Positions 36,383 through 42,131 of a stretch of DNA of 64,000 bases are shown here, one piece after another. The first letter of the stretch is position 1; each line of letters begins with the position of its first letter. The stretch covers positions 186,001 to 250,000 of IMG/VR virus record IMGVR_UViG_3300037010_002844, one strand, 5' to 3'. The notes beneath the pieces were generated by a model that was given only the letters and a program-made list of their open reading frames with translations, was not told the origin of the DNA and searched no databases. The position numbers were made by a program, and so were the translations under genes.

Positions 36383-37342
36383 ATGAAGAGCGTTGCAGTT
36401 ATTGGGCAAGGGTTTGTCGGTGGATCGCTGACCACTGTGTTCGCTGAACGAGGGTTCGACGTCTATGTCTACGATAAGGCTGGTAAGACTGCCACAGGAG
36501 CGCAGTACTCGAAGTTCGTCCGCGGCGTGGCACAACCGTGCGAGTCGGTGGCAGACCTGGTCTCCTCCTGTGAGGAAAAGAAGAATTTTTCAGGCGTCTA
36601 TTTTGTCGCCCTGCCGACGCCGATGTACGAGGACGGCACTGCCGACCTTTCGATTGTAGAGGGCGTGCTCGATGAGCTGGCGGCCTGTACTGGCAATCGC
36701 ATCGCTGTCGTCAAATCAACGGTGCCACCGGGCTCGACAGAACGTTGGAACAAGAAGTACGAAGGCACTGGACTCCGCGTGATCTTCAATCCCGAGTTCC
36801 TGACTGAAGCCAATGCCCTCGATGACATGCGTAATCAGGATCGTATCATCCTTGGTGGACCTCGTCCGTGGATCAACACCGTCAAGTTGATCTTCCAGAC
36901 GGCCTTTCCGAAGGTGACGCTCATCAAGACGTCTTCCACCACGGCTGAGATGGTGAAGTACACCATCAACTGCTTCCTGGCCACCAAGGTGTCCTTCGCC
37001 AACGAGATGGCACAGGTGTGTGAGGCGCTCGATAAGCGTGGACTGAACATCGACTACGATAAGGTCGTGGAATATGCTAGGCTCGACAAGCGCCTTGGCA
37101 ACTCTCACTGGGCCGTCCCGGGTCCGGTGCCCACCCACGATGGCCGCTACGTTCGTGGCTTTGGAGGACACTGCTTCCCAAAGGACATGAACGCATTGAT
37201 CGCTGTGGCCAAGGACTTGGGCGTTGACCCGAAGGTGATGGCCGCGTCTTGGGCCAAGAACCTCGAGGTTCGTGGTCCTGAGGATCGTGACTGGGAACAC
37301 ATGCAGGGCCGCGCTGTTAGCAAGAAAGGAGGCAAGAAGTGA
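36383..37342 (+). CDS. ugd: UDP-glucose/GDP-mannose dehydrogenase family (lacks C-terminal UDP-binding domain)
   Basis: IGQGFVG, ALPTP, KSTVPPG, FNPEFL, GFGGHCFPKD. Confidence 0.88.
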   Translation: MKSVAVIGQGFVGGSLTTVFAERGFDVYVYDKAGKTATGAQYSKFVRGVAQPCESVADLVSSCEEKKNFSGVYFVALPTPMYEDGTADLSIVEGVLDELAACTGNRIAVVKSTVPPGSTERWNKKYEGTGLRVIFNPEFLTEANALDDMRNQDRIILGGPRPWINTVKLIFQTAFPKVTLIKTSSTTAEMVKYTINCFLATKVSFANEMAQVCEALDKRGLNIDYDKVVEYARLDKRLGNSHWAVPGPVPTHDGRYVRGFGGHCFPKDMNALIAVAKDLGVDPKVMAASWAKNLEVRGPEDRDWEHMQGRAVSKKGGKK

Positions 37343-37734
37343 TCAAGTTCTATTGGAGCCGATTGCCCGGCAAGTTCGTCAACAAGACCATTTGCGAGAC
37401 TTTTATGCTCGCGGAAGGTCTGAACGCTGAATCTAAGTTCACCGGCACCGTCCGCGAGTGGTACGAGACGTTGGTGGAGACCTGTATTGACGCGCACAAC
37501 ACGGCAATCCATAAAGGCCTTGCCTCGTCTGAGTGGAAGCCAAACTCCATTGAGTTGCTGGTGGGCCCTGACGTGCACACTATGCTAGAGGCATCGGTGC
37601 TGTACAGGTCCGACGGTCGCCTTGGAGCGCATTTCACCGTGAAGAAAGACAAGGGTCTGACGAACCGTGTCATAATGCGACATCGCGGCGAGGTGATCGG
37701 TGACGTGACCGTCCTCGACCTGCCTTGCCGCTGA
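37339..37734 (+). CDS. Small protein resembling an isolated segment of a gp23-type major capsid protein
   Basis: YWSRLPGKFVN...FTGTVREWYETLVET...VGPDV..MLE matches, from memory, a segment of major capsid proteins of large myophages; not searched. Confidence 0.55.
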   Translation: MIKFYWSRLPGKFVNKTICETFMLAEGLNAESKFTGTVREWYETLVETCIDAHNTAIHKGLASSEWKPNSIELLVGPDVHTMLEASVLYRSDGRLGAHFTVKKDKGLTNRVIMRHRGEVIGDVTVLDLPCR

Positions 37735-37753
37735 ATAAATTCAGCAGTGAATC

Positions 37754-37853
37754 ATCACGCCCGGTGCGATAAACAAATCCGACCGGGCGTGATACCTAAC
37801 CGCATGTGGCAATGCCGCCACCCCTGGCGAGAAACCCAGTGAGGGTTTGCCGG
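37754..37853 (+). promoter_or_regulatory. Structured leader upstream of the NAD salvage genes
   Basis: 12-bp perfect inverted repeat 37754-65/37782-93; bulged hairpin 37826-37851 with AGTGA loop. Confidence 0.5.
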
Positions 37854-37872
37854 AACCAACACGGAGAGTGTC

Positions 37873-38883
37873 ATGCGCGAGTTTGGCGTCTACATTGGGC
37901 GATTTCAGCCCTTTCACAATGCGCACCTAGAGATGGTGCGTTTCGCTCTTAAGCAGGCCAAGCGCCTCATCATCGTCGTCGGTAGCGACAACCAGGCAAG
38001 GAACGTCAAAAACCCCTGGACGACTGCGGAACGAATCAACATGATTCGTGGACCGCTCACTGACGAAGAGCGAGCGCGGGTTGATTTCATCCCCGCCAAG
38101 GACTACCTCTACAACGACAACCTCTGGATCACTGCGGTACAGCGCTCAATCGATGAGGTCACTGACGGGTCAAAGGATGTCATCTTGGTCGGTCACAAGA
38201 AGGACGCCTCGAGCTTCTACTTGAAGCTGTTCCCACAGTGGGACTTCGTGGAGACCGGAATCACAATGGATGTCGATGCAACTCATATCCGTGAGTTGAT
38301 GTTCACGCAGGACAAGATCGGCATTAAGAACCTGGTGCCCGAGGCTGTTTACGGCCAACTTCTGGCGTTCATGGCAACGTCCGAGTTCCAGCGACTCCAC
38401 GAGGAGTACCACCACATCGCGGCGTACAAGGCCTCGTGGGACGGTGCACCCTTCCCTCCGACGTTCAATACCGTCGATGCCATCGTGGTCTGCAGTGGTC
38501 ACGTCCTCGTCGTCCGCCGCCGTGGTGCTCCGGGCAAGGGTTTGATCGCCCTGCCAGGAGGATTCCTGAACGTCAACGAAAAGATCGTCGATGGGATGGT
38601 CCGTGAGCTCAAGGAAGAGACAGGCATCAAGGTTCCGCCCCTCGAGTTGAAGAAGGTCATCGTCGATCAGCGGGTCTTCGATCATCCTGGTCGCTCGCTC
38701 CGCGGACGCACCATCACGCATGCCTTCTGTATCAAGCTTCCCGACGGGGAGCTACCGCAGGTCAAAGGCATGGACGATGCCGACAAGGCCTGGTGGATGC
38801 CTCTGCGAGACGTCTTCTCTCGGGAAGATCAGTTCTTCGAGGATCACTTCCACGTCATCAATTACTTCGTCAACCGCTTCTAA
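37873..38883 (+). CDS. nadM: Bifunctional NMN adenylyltransferase / ADP-ribose pyrophosphatase (NadM-Nudix, NatV-like)
   Basis: GRFQPFHNAH (HxxH), GHKKD.SS.YL, Nudix box GGF...E....MVRELKEETG. Confidence 0.93.
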   Translation: MREFGVYIGRFQPFHNAHLEMVRFALKQAKRLIIVVGSDNQARNVKNPWTTAERINMIRGPLTDEERARVDFIPAKDYLYNDNLWITAVQRSIDEVTDGSKDVILVGHKKDASSFYLKLFPQWDFVETGITMDVDATHIRELMFTQDKIGIKNLVPEAVYGQLLAFMATSEFQRLHEEYHHIAAYKASWDGAPFPPTFNTVDAIVVCSGHVLVVRRRGAPGKGLIALPGGFLNVNEKIVDGMVRELKEETGIKVPPLELKKVIVDQRVFDHPGRSLRGRTITHAFCIKLPDGELPQVKGMDDADKAWWMPLRDVFSREDQFFEDHFHVINYFVNRF

Positions 38884-38935
38884 ACCGCCACGATCGGACC
38901 AGAGAGGTCAGCGTGGCACTCACGGAGAGTGAATC

Positions 38936-40324
38936 ATGTGCAACACCGACTACAACATCATACTAGATTGTGACAGTTACAAGGCTTCGCACTGGCTGCA
39001 ATACCCGCCCAAGACGACCAGCGTCTTCTCGTACATCGAGAGCCGTGGCGGCCGCGACAGCGAGACAGTCGTCTTCGGCCTGCAGTACTTCCTGAAGCGC
39101 TACCTCTCGAGGCCCGTTACCCAGGACAACGTCGATGAGGCCGCCGCGTTCTACGCAGCTCATGGTGAGCCCTTCAACAAGGAAGGTTGGGATCACATCG
39201 TTAAGGACCACGGGGGCAAGTTGCCTCTGCGAATCCGAGCAGTGCCAGAAGGGACCGTCGTCCCGACGTTGAACGCACTGGTCACGGTCGAAAATACCTG
39301 CCCACAATGCTTCTGGACCACCTCGTGGATCGAGACGATGTTGCTCCGCGTCTGGTACCCGATCACGGTGGCGACCGAGAGCCGACACATCAAAAAGCTC
39401 ATCATGAGCTTCCTGGAGAAGACCTCGGATGACCCCAGGGGTGAGATCAACTTCAAGTTGCACGATTTCGGGGCTCGTGGAGTCTCGAGCCAAGAATCGG
39501 CAGCAATCGGTGGCGCCGCGCACCTGGTCAACTTCATGGGCAGCGACACTGTCGTTGGCGTGATGACCGCGAATCGTTACTACAAGACGCCAATGGCCGC
39601 GTTCTCAATTCCAGCTGCTGAGCACTCGACCATTACCTCGTGGGGCAAGGAGAACGAGGCGGAGGCCTACCGCAACATGCTACGGAACTTCGCTAAGCCT
39701 GGAGCACTGGTCGCGGTGGTCAGCGACTCGTACGACATCTACAATGCCTGTGAGCACATCTGGGGCGAGACCCTGCGTCAGGAGGTCAAGGATTCGGGCG
39801 CCATCGTGGTGGTACGTCCGGATTCGGGTCACCCGCCAACCGTGGTGCTCAACTGTCTGCGACTCTTGGAGTCCAAGTTCGGTTCAACTGTCAACTCGAA
39901 GGGCTACAAGGTCCTGAACAACGTTCGCGTCATCCAAGGTGACGGAATCAACCGTGACAGCATCTATGCGATCCTGGACGCGGCGGTGAAGGCCGGCTTC
40001 TCGGCGACCAACATCGCCTTCGGCATGGGAGGCGCGTTGTTGCAGCAACACAACCGCGATACGCAGAAGTTCGCCATGAAGTGTAGTCATATTGTGGCAG
40101 ACGGCCTTGAGATCGACGTCTTCAAGGAACCAGTGACCGACTCGGGCAAGCGCTCGAAGAAGGGGCGTCTGGACCTCGAGGTCTTTGAGGGGCGATTCAC
40201 CACGGGCCGAGTCCCAGTTGGCAAAGAGAAGCTGCCGTACTCAATCATGGAGACGGTGTTCCTGGACGGTGAGGTCCTGAAAGAATACACCCTCGATGAG
40301 GTGCGAGCCCGCGCAGCCCTGTGA
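38936..40324 (+). CDS. nadV: Nicotinamide phosphoribosyltransferase (NAMPT)
   Basis: DSYKASH..QYP, LHDFGARG, SIPAAEHS, VVSDSYD, VRPDSG, IQGDG, FGMGGALLQ. Confidence 0.95.
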   Translation: MCNTDYNIILDCDSYKASHWLQYPPKTTSVFSYIESRGGRDSETVVFGLQYFLKRYLSRPVTQDNVDEAAAFYAAHGEPFNKEGWDHIVKDHGGKLPLRIRAVPEGTVVPTLNALVTVENTCPQCFWTTSWIETMLLRVWYPITVATESRHIKKLIMSFLEKTSDDPRGEINFKLHDFGARGVSSQESAAIGGAAHLVNFMGSDTVVGVMTANRYYKTPMAAFSIPAAEHSTITSWGKENEAEAYRNMLRNFAKPGALVAVVSDSYDIYNACEHIWGETLRQEVKDSGAIVVVRPDSGHPPTVVLNCLRLLESKFGSTVNSKGYKVLNNVRVIQGDGINRDSIYAILDAAVKAGFSATNIAFGMGGALLQQHNRDTQKFAMKCSHIVADGLEIDVFKEPVTDSGKRSKKGRLDLEVFEGRFTTGRVPVGKEKLPYSIMETVFLDGEVLKEYTLDEVRARAAL

Positions 40325-40800
40325 GGGTTGACATGGACGACGATCCGGATTACGATGACATCATGAACGTATTGGACATCAACAACATCCACGGTACCCT
40401 TTGGCAGGGTGCCATTCCGCCGGCAGGCAGCCTGCTGCGTGATAAGGGTTTTGATGTCGTGGTGCTCGCAGCAAGTGATCACCAGGACGCCTCATGGTAC
40501 CCGGGTCTTCATGTCATCCTCGCACCGGGCGATGACGATGAACGTCCACATCGACTTATGAACTTCTTGCCGACATGGCAGGCGGCCGCCCGAGAGGTAG
40601 CCAGCCACGTCAGGTCAGGCAAGAAGGTCCTAGTCACATGCATGTCAGGGTACAATCGCAGCGGGATTGTGACCGCGATGGCCCTTCATGAGTTGACAGG
40701 TTGGAATGGCCACGTCTGCGTCGAGACGATCAAACGGCGCCGTCAGTATGCCTTGTCGAACAAGACATTTGTGGCTTGGGTCCACGACAACCTCAAGTAG
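40321..40800 (+). CDS. Dual-specificity/protein-tyrosine phosphatase-like protein
   Basis: CX5R motif VTCMSGYNRSG; acidic loop GDDD. Confidence 0.8.
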   Translation: MRVDMDDDPDYDDIMNVLDINNIHGTLWQGAIPPAGSLLRDKGFDVVVLAASDHQDASWYPGLHVILAPGDDDERPHRLMNFLPTWQAAAREVASHVRSGKKVLVTCMSGYNRSGIVTAMALHELTGWNGHVCVETIKRRRQYALSNKTFVAWVHDNLK

Positions 40801-41074: not shown

Positions 41075-41422
41075 ATGAAGAACATCTATTTGCGCGTACT
41101 TCGCGCCAAGATCCGCGGTCTGCAGGCCACCGGCGTTTCGATCCACAATCGTATCCGCAAGACGAGCGGCAAGCGACGTGATTCGCTGTGGCAGGAAAAG
41201 CGAAGGATTGGAACCTTCAACAGGGAGCACCTGATTGCTTACGGTTTGCTTCGCGGCATCCCGTATGAGAGGATTGAACATTGCTCAAACGTAAATCGAC
41301 CCAGTCCCGCAAGGATTCACGAGCTGATGCTCGCCCACATGCCTCCTTGGGAGGCAAAAAAGCTCACGGTGGAGGCGGTGCAGGCCCTTCTCGAGCCCAC
41401 GGAAAAAAGGCTCGAAAAATGA
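41075..41422 (+). CDS. Basic hypothetical protein
   Basis: GAGAGGA SD; R..HLIAYGLLRG.PYE.IE motif; coupled to the PTH2-like gene. Confidence 0.75.
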   Translation: MKNIYLRVLRAKIRGLQATGVSIHNRIRKTSGKRRDSLWQEKRRIGTFNREHLIAYGLLRGIPYERIEHCSNVNRPSPARIHELMLAHMPPWEAKKLTVEAVQALLEPTEKRLEK

Positions 41423-41778
41423 GTGGTGGAAACCACAAGGTTAAGACGGGGGATAAATTGTACCTCGTCACGCGGCGAGACATTGCGCCTGGTTACCAGG
41501 CCGTGCAGTCTTGCCATGCCATTCGACAGTTCACGGCTGATCATCCTGATCGCGATGGTGAGTGGTTTACCAACTCTAACTACCTCGCGTTGCTGTCAGT
41601 GGCCGATGAGGTAGAGCTGATGCGTCTTATCACCGCTGCCAAGGACCATGGCCTGCGTTGGAGTGCTTTCCGTGAACCTAACGTGGGAGGCGCCATCACG
41701 GCGATCGCCATCGAGCCACATCCCAAGACGGCAGAGCTCTGTAAGAACCTGCCACTGGCGCTCAAGGAACTGTCATGA
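41419..41778 (+). CDS. Peptidyl-tRNA hydrolase II (PTH2)-fold protein
   Basis: Start moved to MSGGNH; KLYLVTRRDI..G..AVQSCHA, L.LSV.DE.EL, FREP...GAITAIAIEP. Confidence 0.7.
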   Translation: MSGGNHKVKTGDKLYLVTRRDIAPGYQAVQSCHAIRQFTADHPDRDGEWFTNSNYLALLSVADEVELMRLITAAKDHGLRWSAFREPNVGGAITAIAIEPHPKTAELCKNLPLALKELS

Positions 41779-42131
41779 GCGACGAACACAAGGCGCCCGA
41801 CACAATCACCTTCGATGACTTCTTGAAGGTCGATATTCGTGTGGGCGAAATCACTAAGTCAGAGGCAGTGCCCAAGAGCGACAAACTTGTCAAGCTCGAG
41901 GTCTACTTTGGATCCGAGATCGGCTATCGCACCATTATGGCCGGCATCGCTAAGAGCTACCACGTGGAGATGTTGGTCGGCACTCGGGTGTTGGCCGTGG
42001 TCAACCTTGCGCCTCGCAAGATGATGGGCGTTGAATCACACGGAATGCTTCTAGCAGGACATGACCCGGTGACGGGCACAGTTACACTTGCCACGTGTAT
42101 GGGAGTTCCCTGGGGAGAACGAATCGGTTGA
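41775..42131 (+). CDS. tRNA-binding OB-fold protein (Trbp111/CsaA/MetRS C-terminal-like)
   Basis: ITFDDF.KVDIRVG.I..E.VP.SDKL, VVNL.PRKMMGVESHGMLLA. Confidence 0.9.
   Translation: MSDEHKAPDTITFDDFLKVDIRVGEITKSEAVPKSDKLVKLEVYFGSEIGYRTIMAGIAKSYHVEMLVGTRVLAVVNLAPRKMMGVESHGMLLAGHDPVTGTVTLATCMGVPWGERIG

What the first reader, a model, noticed from the sequence alone, without database searches (positions are those of the whole stretch)
37339..37734. Stand-alone major-capsid-protein fragment outside the morphogenesis region
YWSRLPGKFVN and FTGTVREWYETLVET recall a segment of gp23-type capsid proteins of large myophages (recalled, not searched). It is an intact 131-aa ORF between the glycan cluster and the NAD anti-defence genes. 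Several bacterial immune systems (e.g. CapRel, Lit) are triggered by capsid protein, so it could be a decoy or antagonist. Alternatively it is an assembly modulator or a glycosylation-targeting adaptor.
Basis: inference. Interest (0 to 1): 0.6.

Follow-up and report, generated by a model that had tools for sequence, protein, structure and literature searches.

The report
Free-standing capsid A-domain protein family
A huge uncultured phage carries, far from its head genes, a small intact gene that is a trimmed copy of just the central (axial) domain of its own major capsid protein; dozens of related phages keep such a gene, so it is functional, but what it does (immune decoy, assembly cap or enzyme partner) is still open.

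Summary
Window 37339-37734 (+) is an intact 131-aa ORF. It has a Shine-Dalgarno site and a GTGA start/stop overlap with the upstream gene. It is 47% identical (E 4e-27) to residues 445-543 of the phage's own 633-aa gp23-type capsid protein (MCP), which lies 56.6 kb away.

Alignment and a confident AlphaFold model (pLDDT 91) show it is the HK97 axial (A) domain alone. Both excursions towards the P domain are cleanly removed. VIA-align gives T4 gp23 Z 8.2.

It belongs to a family found only in uncultured phages. About 50 members are short forms (125-180 aa) and 19 are long forms (about 235 aa). Residues 5-54 (strand, loop, helix) are as invariant as in the MCPs. The rest evolves 20-40 times faster than in the MCPs.

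The gene is accessory. It always sits in non-structural modules: next to a truncated UDP-sugar dehydrogenase in five lineages, and after dUTPase in five others.

Function is not shown. My ranking:
- Soluble mimic of the MCP capsomer-forming face that antagonises capsid-sensing immunity: 0.35.
- MCP-binding cap or assembly modulator: 0.25.
- Enzyme partner like the Family 4 "A-domain encapsulins": 0.2.

The same genome also encodes small proteins that carry other MCP pieces, including the region equivalent to the T4 Gol peptide.

The parts
37339..37734 (+). ORF of 131 aa (GTG start, TGA stop): free-standing copy of the axial (A) domain of the phage's gp23-type major capsid protein
   Evidence: ORF; 47% identity, E 4e-27, to own MCP residues 445-543. 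AF2 pLDDT 91.4, pTM 0.85. VIA-align Z 8.2 to T4 gp23 residues 315-521 and Z 8.0 to gp24. Of the top 50 hits, 48 are HK97-fold capsid or encapsulin proteins; the other two are PF0899 (2PK8) and a de novo designed protein.
37325..37332 (+). Shine-Dalgarno-like AAAGGAGG, six bases before the GTG start
   Evidence: Read directly from the sequence.
37339..37342 (+). GTGA overlap of this ORF's start with the stop of the upstream dehydrogenase-like gene. This suggests translational coupling and a shared operon.
   Evidence: The same kind of overlap with the upstream gene is seen in relatives L003, L096 and L100.
37351..37500 (+). Residues 5-54: first strand, long loop (RxPGKFVNK ... FxGTV) and most of the first A-domain helix (REWYETLxExxID). 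This segment is invariant both in the small proteins and in the MCPs.
   Evidence: W6 R8 G11 F13 F34 G36 E40 W41 Y42 E43 T44 L45 are invariant in 37 small proteins and 67 MCPs; synonymous sites vary freely, so selection acts on the protein.
37501..37731 (+). Residues 55-131: the rest of the A-domain (strand, second helix, three strands, C-terminal VLD motif). It is fast-evolving. It carries the two junctions where MCP segments are missing: after about residue 92 (MCP ~529-549, which aligns with the T4 gp23 residues 384-400 placed in the 'AP loop') and after about residue 117 (MCP ~575-621, the P-domain strands).
   Evidence: alignment to own MCP; positions invariant in MCPs are free in the small proteins; end branches 1.5-4.3 versus a median of 0.09 for the whole tree, set by the tightly clustered MCP rows; mapping to T4 residues 384-400 and 486-502.
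37730..37872 (+). Strongly structured 143-nt spacer after the ORF. A small hairpin lies over the stop codon and a 12-bp GC-rich stem at 37754-37793. It is probably an operon boundary or RNA-processing site between the glycan operon and the NAD genes.
   Evidence: minimum free energy -59.4 kcal/mol, z = -5.2, and 0 of 200 shuffles fold as well. There is no T tract, so the simple terminator scan did not list it.
36383..37342 (+). Conserved neighbour: a 319-aa UDP-glucose/GDP-mannose dehydrogenase-like gene with only the N-terminal and central domains (the C-terminal UDP-binding domain is missing)
   Evidence: Pfam PF03721 and PF00984 only. The same truncated gene lies within one gene of the small protein in L003, L095, L006 and L108.

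Best explanation
What it is (well supported): a domesticated, free-standing copy of the axial (A) domain of the phage's own gp23-type major capsid protein. It begins where the MCP spine helix ends and stops at the MCP C-terminus. Both excursions that run into the P domain have been removed. It is a member of a conserved accessory gene family of uncultured large phages.

How it most likely works (inferred, not shown): it is made from a non-structural operon as a soluble look-alike of unassembled capsid protein. Selection holds only one part of it identical to the MCP: the first strand, the basic RxPGKFVNK loop and the acidic EWYETLxExxID helix. I infer that this part belongs to the capsomer-forming face of the A-domain. 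By presenting that face without the P domain, E-loop and N-arm, it competes for whatever recognises it.

I favour host immune sensors that bind the A-domain of free MCP. In that model it occupies them without giving the full MCP surface they need to switch on. The neighbouring NAD+-salvage pair would then be a second layer against NAD-depleting effectors.
For: Shown:
- Homology to the own MCP.
- A-domain-only architecture with precise domain boundaries.
- A family of about 50 short and 19 long forms that share 30-55% identity yet keep intact ORFs.
- Residues 5-54 are invariant and identical to the MCP motif, while synonymous sites vary. The remainder evolves 20-40 times faster than in MCPs. 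So the constraint is 'stay like, or complementary to, the MCP here'.
- Accessory distribution: ten IMG/VR records with the same MCP type (24-82% complete) have none. If the gene were universal and randomly placed, the chance of that is about 0.001.
- It always lies in non-structural modules. These are a glycan / NAD-salvage / phosphatase / PTH2 module or the PolA-RecA-dUTPase-RNaseH-DnaB module. In T4-type phages the replication genes are early or middle genes.
- NMNAT-Nudix and Nampt genes lie directly downstream here and near the copy in L095.

From the literature:
[quoted passage not shown] Avs7 additionally contacts the P domain and E-loop. The homologous Dsr1 sensor also recognises MCPs (bioRxiv 10.64898/2026.01.04.697583).
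- The two main A-domain helices form the major inter-subunit interface of a pentameric facet (10.1101/2021.03.18.436031).

Consistent side observation: the same genome encodes small proteins that display other conserved MCP pieces, including the region aligned with T4 gp23 ~91-136, where by my recollection the Gol peptide lies.
Against: - No sensor, host or binding partner is known, and nothing was assayed.
- Fragments of a trigger usually activate a sensor rather than block it. The T4 Gol peptide alone activates Lit.
- Expression timing is inferred from gene neighbourhood only. No RNA data exist and no promoter signal was found.
- Pairing with a truncated UDP-sugar dehydrogenase in five lineages and with dUTPase in five others points rather to an enzyme partner.
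- Whether residues 5-54 are surface-exposed interface or simply the folding core could not be checked on coordinates.
- The complex prediction with the MCP gave no answer.
Confidence: 0.35

Rival explanations
1. MCP-binding cap or assembly modulator. The small protein keeps one of the two lateral faces that A-domains use in a capsomer. It therefore docks on free MCP or on open capsomers but cannot propagate the ring. It would act as a holdase that prevents premature or aberrant self-assembly, or as a minor capsid component at special positions.
For: The conserved part is identical to the MCP's own invariant segment. This is what one expects if the partner is the frozen MCP itself. A-domain helices form the main inter-subunit interface. 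In T4 an A-domain loop dominates A-A contacts in the prohead (PMC9546572). One family member (P0044) lies 2.3 kb downstream of its MCP gene.
Against: The gene is accessory. Except for P0044 it lies outside head modules. It evolves 20-40 times faster than the MCP, which is unusual for a stoichiometric assembly partner. A fragment that caps capsomers would also poison the phage's own assembly unless tightly regulated. The complex prediction gave no answer, which is not evidence either way.
Confidence: 0.25
2. Enzyme-associated A-domain scaffold, analogous to Family 4 'A-domain encapsulins'. The protein would oligomerise through its A-domain helices and bind the enzyme encoded next to it (truncated UDP-sugar dehydrogenase, or dUTPase), stabilising or organising it.
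For: It has the same architecture as DUF1884 proteins, namely an A-domain alone. VIA-align to PF0899/2PK8 gives Z 7.0, 82 of 94 residues aligned, rmsd 2.6. It lies within one gene of a truncated UDPG_MGDP_dh in five lineages despite changes of gene order and of the other neighbours. It lies immediately after dUTPase, or one small ORF away, in five others. In Pyrococcus the A-domain protein sits downstream of GAPDH, DeoC, OsmC or hydrogenase and forms a stable complex with GAPDH.
Against: This does not explain why residues 5-54 stay identical to the MCP in every lineage while the rest drifts. The partner enzyme differs between lineages, and no identified enzyme gene lies directly next to it in three contexts (P0056, P0070, P0044). 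Tight gene packing with overlapping stops is the rule in phage genomes. The shared neighbourhoods may be inherited synteny. There is no sequence membership in PF08967.
Confidence: 0.2
3. Glycosylation adaptor or substrate mimic. The A-domain copy would recruit the phage glycan machinery to the capsid, or prime or regulate capsid glycosylation.
For: It is the last gene of the glycan operon in the window, with translational coupling. It lies inside sugar-nucleotide clusters in L003, L006, L095 and L108.
Against: Five lineages keep it in the replication module with no glycan gene within the 5-7 kb of flank read on either side. There is no evidence that these phages glycosylate their capsid.
Confidence: 0.07
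4. Functionless remnant of a partial MCP duplication.
For: The same genome holds other MCP pieces that tile the MCP without overlap. One relative lies beside a homing endonuclease next to the MCP gene. This suggests how such copies arise.
Against: Dozens of diverged homologues are all intact and share the same domain boundaries. They have protein-level invariant positions with free synonymous sites, a confident compact fold, and ribosome-binding and coupling signals.
Confidence: 0.03

Closest known systems
Family 4 'A-domain encapsulins' (Pfam PF08967/DUF1884; e.g. Pyrococcus furiosus PF0899, PDB 2PK8)
   Same: A free-standing protein of about 100-130 aa that is the HK97 A-domain alone: two helices on a beta sheet. 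Structural match Z 7.0, 82 aligned residues. It is often encoded next to an enzyme gene. Its function is likewise unknown.
   Different: No sequence membership: no PF08967 hit in any of 37 members. This family is clearly derived from the gp23-type MCP of its own phage clade (47% identity) and is encoded by phages, not by thermophilic archaea or Bacteroidetes. It keeps an MCP-identical segment. It probably has an independent origin.
T4 gp24 vertex protein (MCP paralogue by gene duplication)
   Same: A paralogue of the gp23-type MCP kept in the same phage genome. The model matches gp24 with Z 8.0.
   Different: gp24 is a full-length HK97-fold protein that forms the pentameric vertices and is encoded with the head genes. 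This protein is the A-domain only, is accessory, and lies in non-structural modules.
Trigger peptides and surfaces of capsid-sensing immunity (T4 Gol peptide/Lit; MCP A-domain face bound by Avs7, Avs8, Avs10; MCP sensing by Dsr1 and CapRel)
   Same: It consists of an invariant part of the MCP A-domain, the domain whose capsomer-forming face the Avs7/8/10 sensors are reported to bind. The genome also has a small protein carrying the region that aligns with T4 gp23 ~91-136.
   Different: Those are parts of the real MCP that act as triggers. A phage-encoded separate copy acting as an antagonist has not been described in the papers I could search and is not shown here.
Satellite-encoded capsid-remodelling proteins, including MCP homologues of capsid-forming PICIs
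   Same: Capsid-protein-related or capsid-binding accessory proteins that alter assembly of a phage's capsid. cf-PICI MCP appears among the structural matches (Z 5.9).
   Different: Those are encoded by satellites and are full MCPs or external scaffolds. This one is encoded by the phage itself and is a single domain.

Membership tests
Gp23-type major capsid protein (Pfam PF07068, HK97 fold) | Significant sequence similarity to Gp23-family capsid proteins | tested here: met
   E 4e-27 and 47% identity to the own MCP, which scores 252.7 bits on PF07068. The PF07068 model itself does not reach P0001 and hits only 3 of the 37 family members.
Gp23-type major capsid protein (Pfam PF07068, HK97 fold) | Complete HK97 architecture: N-arm, E-loop or insertion domain, P domain with spine helix, and A domain | tested here: not met
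   Only the A-domain is present. The protein starts after the spine helix and lacks MCP ~529-549 and ~575-621.
Gp23-type major capsid protein (Pfam PF07068, HK97 fold) | Encoded with the head-morphogenesis genes and forms the shell | tested here: not met
   It lies 56.6 kb from the MCP gene, at the end of a glycan operon. Shell formation itself is not testable here.
Family 4 A-domain encapsulins (PF08967/DUF1884) | Protein consists of the HK97 A-domain alone | tested here: met
   AF2 model pLDDT 91.4. 2PK8 matches with Z 7.0, 82 of 94 residues, rmsd 2.6. T4 gp23 A-domain matches with Z 8.2.
Family 4 A-domain encapsulins (PF08967/DUF1884) | Sequence membership in PF08967 | tested here: not met
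   No Pfam hit for P0001 at E <= 10. PF08967 does not appear for any of the 37 members at E <= 1.
Family 4 A-domain encapsulins (PF08967/DUF1884) | Conserved two-gene operon, immediately downstream of an enzyme gene | tested here: inconclusive
   It lies next to, or one gene from, a truncated UDPG_MGDP_dh in 5 lineages (twice upstream of it). It lies after dUTPase in 5 lineages. In 3 contexts no identified enzyme gene lies directly next to it.
Family 4 A-domain encapsulins (PF08967/DUF1884) | Physical complex with the neighbouring enzyme; self-assembly into facets | not tested
T4 gp24-type vertex protein | Full-length MCP paralogue able to form pentameric vertices | tested here: not met
   131 aa, A-domain only. 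A search of the genome with the whole MCP finds no second full-length paralogue.
Phage anti-defence mimic/decoy (functional class) | Presents the molecular pattern that a host sensor recognises | tested here: inconclusive
   It keeps an invariant A-domain segment identical to the MCP's. Sensors that bind the A-domain capsomer-forming face are described for other phages. Host and sensor are unknown here, and I could not show that the invariant segment is that face.
Phage anti-defence mimic/decoy (functional class) | Made before or with the trigger, and blocks a defined defence system | not testable with these tools
   No RNA runs hold the sequence. No promoter signal was found. The phage is uncultured.

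The most novel reading that the evidence does not exclude
Large uncultured phages carry a repertoire of soluble capsid-protein mimics. One is a free A-domain that presents the capsomer-forming face. Others, in this genome, are small proteins that display the Gol-equivalent and spine-helix-adjacent MCP segments. Together they would act as competitive antagonists of bacterial capsid-sensing immunity (Avs7/8/10- and Dsr1-type sensors, Lit- or CapRel-type peptide sensors). This would be the first case of a virus decoying recognition of its own capsid with domain copies of that capsid.
Probability: 0.3. Interest if true: 0.9.

Novelty: new variant of a known kind. Interest (0 to 1): 0.65.

Why it matters
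Capsid proteins are among the main patterns that bacterial immunity recognises, and phages cannot easily mutate them. Here a phage gene family keeps only the most constrained part of the capsid protein, as a separate soluble domain, outside the head genes. That makes it a concrete, clonable candidate for a counter-measure against capsid sensing. The test is simple: co-express it with MCP-sensing systems.

If it instead turns out to be an assembly cap or an enzyme partner, two things follow. It would be the first viral counterpart of the enigmatic A-domain-only 'Family 4 encapsulins', and it would suggest where those came from. In either case it shows that HK97-fold capsid genes are a source of new single-domain proteins in phage genomes. 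It also defines a family that current Pfam and PHROG models miss.

Tried and rejected
- Pfam and PHROGs on the ORF: no family. The only row was phrog_31962 at E 0.32.
- tblastn of the ORF and of a long-form relative against 50,697 deposited phage genomes: nothing except the MCP of one uncultured huge phage. Megablast of the locus: nothing.
- Profile of the family against PDB sequences: only chance rows, such as calpain at E 0.45.
- Foldseek against PDB: HK97 proteins, but all with E > 0.001. VIA-align was needed.
- ESM Atlas look-alikes: chance-level only.
- IMG/VR scan with the whole-family alignment: returned only full-length MCPs. A scan with a subfamily-specific C-terminal alignment found none.
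- The genome search on loci from the look-up of encoding contigs: not held.
- Complex prediction, MCP (633 aa) plus small protein: 'no answer', score 0.00. This is not evidence for or against binding.
- Expression timing: no enriched upstream k-mer, no T4-type late promoter TATAAATA upstream of the MCP gene, and sigma-70 and terminator scans at shuffle level. No RNA runs. Contigs of four DNA runs show no polymorphism in the gene, so no within-population dN/dS was possible.
- Nucleotide-level constraint or gene conversion as the cause of the invariant motif: rejected, because synonymous sites vary freely across MCP genes and small-protein genes. A 24-nt run identical between this gene and the own MCP gene exists but fits shared codon bias.
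- The residue range of the T4 'A loop' could not be found in the papers available. Equating it with the conserved loop is my inference only.
- The large representative-protein search was not used. The word search with the family profile already gave the relatives, and no claim here rests on absence in that library.
Full report
**1. The observation**

Window 37339-37734 (+) is an open frame of 131 codons. It starts with GTG and ends with TGA. An AAAGGAGG motif lies six bases upstream. The GTG overlaps the TGA of the preceding gene as GTGA, so it looks like the last, translationally coupled gene of an operon.

The window is part of a 309,433-bp IMG/VR virus record, 91% complete by CheckV. Contigs of 74 kb and 68 kb from two sediment-metagenome runs span the stretch without a difference. 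Shorter contigs from two microbial-mat runs tile most of it. The four runs come from four studies, but three of the samples may be the window's own source.

**2. It is derived from this phage's own capsid protein**

A search of the whole genome with the 131-aa protein finds one other place. That place lies inside a 633-aa gene at G000:C1:164796-166697(-), 56.6 kb upstream of the ORF. That gene is the major capsid protein (MCP):
- Pfam Gp23, 252.7 bits.
- phrog_138 'major head protein', E 1e-70.
- T4 gp23 in the PDB, E 3e-30.

BLASTP gives 47% identity over 104 residues, E 4e-27. ORF residues 4-101 match MCP residues 445-543. The recall was correct.

**3. Anatomy**

A multiple alignment shows the small protein is collinear with MCP 441-633.
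- It starts directly after the spine helix.
- It ends at the MCP C-terminus: VTVLDLPCR versus VTVLDMNVI.
- It lacks two internal pieces, MCP ~529-549 and MCP ~575-621.

Through the alignment with T4 gp23, the first missing piece aligns with the gp23 residues 384-400 that the T4 structure paper places in the 'AP loop'. The second corresponds to the P-domain strands and the A-P linker at 486-502 (PMC9546572). What remains is the axial (A) domain with everything that reaches into the P domain cut out.

AlphaFold2 with the family alignment gives a confident compact model, pLDDT 91.4 and pTM 0.85. Its elements are strand 2-7, helix 38-58, strand 71-75, helix 77-84 and strands 99-126.

An exhaustive structural comparison returns almost only HK97-fold capsid and encapsulin proteins. 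All are aligned through their A-domains:
- Jumbo phage S6 MCP, Z 10.4.
- T4 gp23, Z 8.2 (102 residues, chain 315-521).
- T4 gp24, Z 8.0.

**4. It is a gene family, not a remnant**

The word-based protein search found 82 relatives. About 37 of them are free-standing proteins of 125-177 aa without a Pfam domain. Some lie on contigs of 74-305 kb.

A second search with the family profile gave 491 hits in the length window. Among the 171 sequences retrieved I count roughly 50-60 short forms. I also count 19 long forms of 232-251 aa.

The long forms carry about 105 extra N-terminal residues. Their model has pLDDT 82.6 and matches T4 gp23 with Z 11.0 over residues 64-237. So the extension adds P-domain-like strands behind a new helix.

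No deposited phage genome has either form.

Members share only 30-55% identity. Even so, W6 R8 G11 F13 F34 G36 E40 W41 Y42 E43 T44 L45 are invariant.

A position-by-position comparison with the MCPs shows two different regimes:
- Residues 5-54 are conserved in both sets, with the same residues.
- Residues 56-131 are invariant in the MCPs but free in the small proteins.

Synonymous sites in the GTVREWYETL codons vary freely in both sets, so selection acts on the protein.

In a tree the MCP rows form a tight cluster with very short end branches (the median over all rows is 0.09). The small proteins have end branches of 1.5-4.3, and the window's copy is not sister to its own MCP. One origin is neither ruled out nor shown. 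P0044 nests inside the MCP clade and may be an independent, less reduced derivative.

The window's copy is atypical in the middle of the loop: I18, C19 and E31-S32 where the family has T, G and G-P. It keeps all invariant positions.

**5. Distribution and neighbourhood**

Ten IMG/VR records with the same MCP type (24-82% complete) contain the MCP but no small copy. If the gene were universal and randomly placed, the chance of that is about 0.001. The gene is therefore accessory.

I read thirteen genomic contexts.

- *Next to a truncated dehydrogenase (five lineages).* The gene lies within one gene of a truncated UDP-glucose/GDP-mannose dehydrogenase-like gene of 305-332 aa. That gene has N-terminal and central domains only.
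  - Downstream of it: the window, P0003 and P0011.
  - Upstream of it: P0014 and the long form P0100.
  - All five sit inside sugar-nucleotide or glycan clusters.
- *Same auxiliary module, no glycan gene adjacent.* P0056 lies in a DSPc - x - x - gene - PTH2 - tRNA_bind - HD - PDDEXK arrangement.
- *Replication module (five lineages).* The order is PolA - gp32-like - RecA - dUTPase - gene - 5'-3' exonuclease - DnaB - RNR. The gene usually overlaps the dUTPase stop.
- *Other.* One copy lies among small ORFs 1 kb from a phage Cpn60. P0044 lies 2.3 kb downstream of its MCP gene, behind a NUMOD3 homing endonuclease.

In the window the ORF ends the glycan operon. A strongly structured 143-nt spacer (z = -5.2) separates it from an NMNAT-Nudix gene and a Nampt gene. 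By my knowledge these resemble the KVP40 NatV/NadV NAD+ salvage pair and the phage NAD+-reconstitution pathway described as a counter-defence.

**6. What the conserved part is likely to be**

On helix 38-58 the invariant E40, E43, E47, D51 and N54 fall on one helical face. W41, L45 and position 49 fall on another face and Y42, V46 and I50 on a third. This follows from helical periodicity, not from coordinates. The preceding loop carries invariant or near-invariant R8, K12 and K16.

According to Andreas and Giessen, the two main A-domain helices form the major interface between subunits of an HK97 facet. In T4 an extended A-domain loop dominates A-A contacts in the prohead. I could not find its residue numbers, so equating it with this loop is an inference.

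My reading is that the small protein keeps one lateral, capsomer-forming face of the A-domain and lets the rest drift. A constraint that keeps it identical to the MCP in every lineage has two simple explanations:
- It binds the MCP, whose side of the interface is frozen.
- It must look like the MCP to something else.

Binding an adjacent enzyme alone would not explain the pattern.

**7. Mechanism and rivals**

A 2026 preprint shows three things:
- Avs7 wraps the MCP with additional contacts to the P domain and E-loop.
- The homologous Dsr1 sensor, which by its name carries a sirtuin effector, also recognises MCPs.

Taken together, the following make a competitive mimic of free MCP my first choice, at 0.35:
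- accessory distribution;
- non-structural, early-type neighbourhoods;
- fast evolution outside the MCP-identical face;
- NAD-salvage genes next door.

In this model the mimic occupies A-domain-binding sensors without providing the whole surface needed for activation.

The main objection is that trigger fragments often activate sensors. The Gol peptide alone activates Lit (PMC3014915).

The rivals, with my weights:
- An MCP cap or assembly modulator, 0.25.
- An enzyme partner like the Family 4 A-domain encapsulins, 0.2. The recurrent pairing with the truncated dehydrogenase and with dUTPase supports this, as does the Pyrococcus GAPDH complex precedent.
- A glycosylation adaptor, 0.07.
- A dead remnant, 0.03.

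The one complex prediction I could run, MCP plus small protein, gave no answer and is not used as evidence.

**8. Other capsid-protein pieces in the same genome (outside the window)**

A search of the genome with the whole MCP found two further places at G000:C1:16.5-17.7 kb. They lie in a tight array of small overlapping plus-strand ORFs. I label three of these ORFs F1, F2 and F3.

| ORF | Length | MCP-derived part | Match to own MCP | Evidence |
|---|---|---|---|---|
| F1 | 111 aa | residues 45-111 (C-terminal end) | 346-412 | E 9e-15; Pfam Gp23 34.4 bits (residues 76-111) |
| F2 | 96 aa | C-terminal end | spine helix 415-437 | weak, E 0.049 |
| F3 | 119 aa | residues 69-114 | 82-127 | 54% identity, E 2e-15; Pfam Gp23 30 bits |

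MCP 82-127 aligns with T4 gp23 ~91-136. By my recollection this region contains the Gol peptide (residues 93-122). The review I could read confirms only three points: it is a 29-residue region in the first quarter of gp23, it is the most conserved part, and it binds EF-Tu.

F1, F2 and the window's protein tile MCP 346-412, 415-437 and 445-633 without overlap.

F3 has only a 97% identical variant elsewhere. However, another phage has a 114-aa protein (P0089) with the same peptide at its N-terminus, also in an array of small ORFs.

I cannot explain this pattern. It fits a repertoire of MCP mimics. It also fits a broken-up second MCP copy whose pieces were captured by a small-gene family.

**9. 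Comparison with what is known, and novelty**

The closest known kind is the Family 4 'A-domain encapsulin' (DUF1884; 2PK8 matches at Z 7.0). It shares the architecture, but this family is not a sequence member. It is phage-encoded and demonstrably derived from a gp23-type MCP.

T4 gp24 is the classical MCP paralogue but is full-length. I found no paper describing a phage-encoded free A-domain or a capsid decoy. The library searched is incomplete.

I rate it a new variant of a known kind, with interest 0.65. The identity is solid and the family is new to the databases. It also offers a direct experimental handle on capsid sensing. The function remains inferred.

Noticed in passing
Outside the window: G000:C1:16527-17684 (+); locus L105:1375-2532: Three adjacent small ORFs (111, 96 and 119 aa) in a tight array each end in a piece of the MCP. 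The pieces match MCP 346-412, the spine helix 415-437 (weak) and MCP 82-127. The last aligns with T4 gp23 ~91-136, where I recall the Gol peptide. With the window's ORF they tile the MCP without overlap. Two of the N-terminal parts are weakly paralogous.
   Followed up: partly
L106:6001-6345 (protein P0089, 43-kb contig of another phage): A 114-aa protein whose first ~30 residues are the same conserved MCP peptide (DLVSVQPMSQPSGLVFYLDYKYG), fused to an unrelated C-terminal part. It lies in an array of small ORFs near YopX and PTH2 genes, not in an MCP gene.
   Followed up: partly
L108:8001-8723 (IMG/VR; protein P0100) and alignment A4: Long forms of the family (232-251 aa, 19 found) carry a ~105-residue N-terminal extension: a long helix plus P-domain-like strands. 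In L108 the gene lies between a UDP-galactopyranose mutase and the same truncated UDP-sugar dehydrogenase-like gene.
   Followed up: partly
L099:2837-7531: In one relative the small copy (P0044, 176 aa) is 46% identical to its own MCP and still has a loop-sized segment at the position of the first deletion. It lies 2.3 kb downstream of the MCP gene, behind a 469-aa NUMOD3 homing-endonuclease-like gene. This hints at how such partial duplications arise.
   Followed up: partly
window 36383-37342 (+): The UDP-glucose/GDP-mannose dehydrogenase-like gene has only the NAD-binding and central domains (319 aa). The C-terminal UDP-binding domain is absent. The same truncated form recurs next to the small capsid-domain gene in four other lineages.
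   Followed up: partly
window 37873-40324 (+): A bifunctional NMN-adenylyltransferase/Nudix gene and a nicotinamide phosphoribosyltransferase gene form an NAD+ salvage pair of the kind known from phage KVP40 and described as a counter-defence. They are followed by a dual-specificity phosphatase (40321-40800), PTH2 (41281-41778) and a tRNA-binding-domain protein (41775-42131).
   Followed up: partly
window 37730-37872: The spacer after the ORF folds far better than shuffles (-59.4 kcal/mol, z -5.2), with a 12-bp GC-rich stem at 37754-37793 and no T tract. I did not check whether it recurs elsewhere in the genome.
   Followed up: no
window 37450-37473 versus G000:C1 MCP codons 479-486: The codons for VREWYETL are identical over 24 nt between the small gene and the phage's own MCP gene. 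Other genomes use varied codons there. This could be shared codon bias or a short gene-conversion tract.
   Followed up: partly
Family members P0039, P0011, P0045, P0056 (alignment A1, columns ~155-190): Several relatives carry CxxC (in P0039 two CxxC pairs) in an insertion at the position of the deleted AP loop. They give weak zinc-ribbon Pfam rows, which suggests lineage-specific metal-binding tips on the variable side of the domain.
   Followed up: no
Outside the window: G000:C1:77815-79333 and 85495-85992 versus 86077-87762: Three small ORFs resemble the C-terminal ~90 residues of a 561-aa protein of the same genome (up to 48% identity). This is another case of domain-sized paralogues.
   Followed up: no
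BFVD structural hits: Small uncharacterised proteins of cultured viruses gave weak structural matches to the model. Examples are Pseudomonas phage Phabio (139 aa), Halogranum tailed virus 1 (100 aa) and Flavobacterium phage lotta8-1 (104 aa). Free A-domain-like proteins may be more widespread than this family.
   Followed up: no
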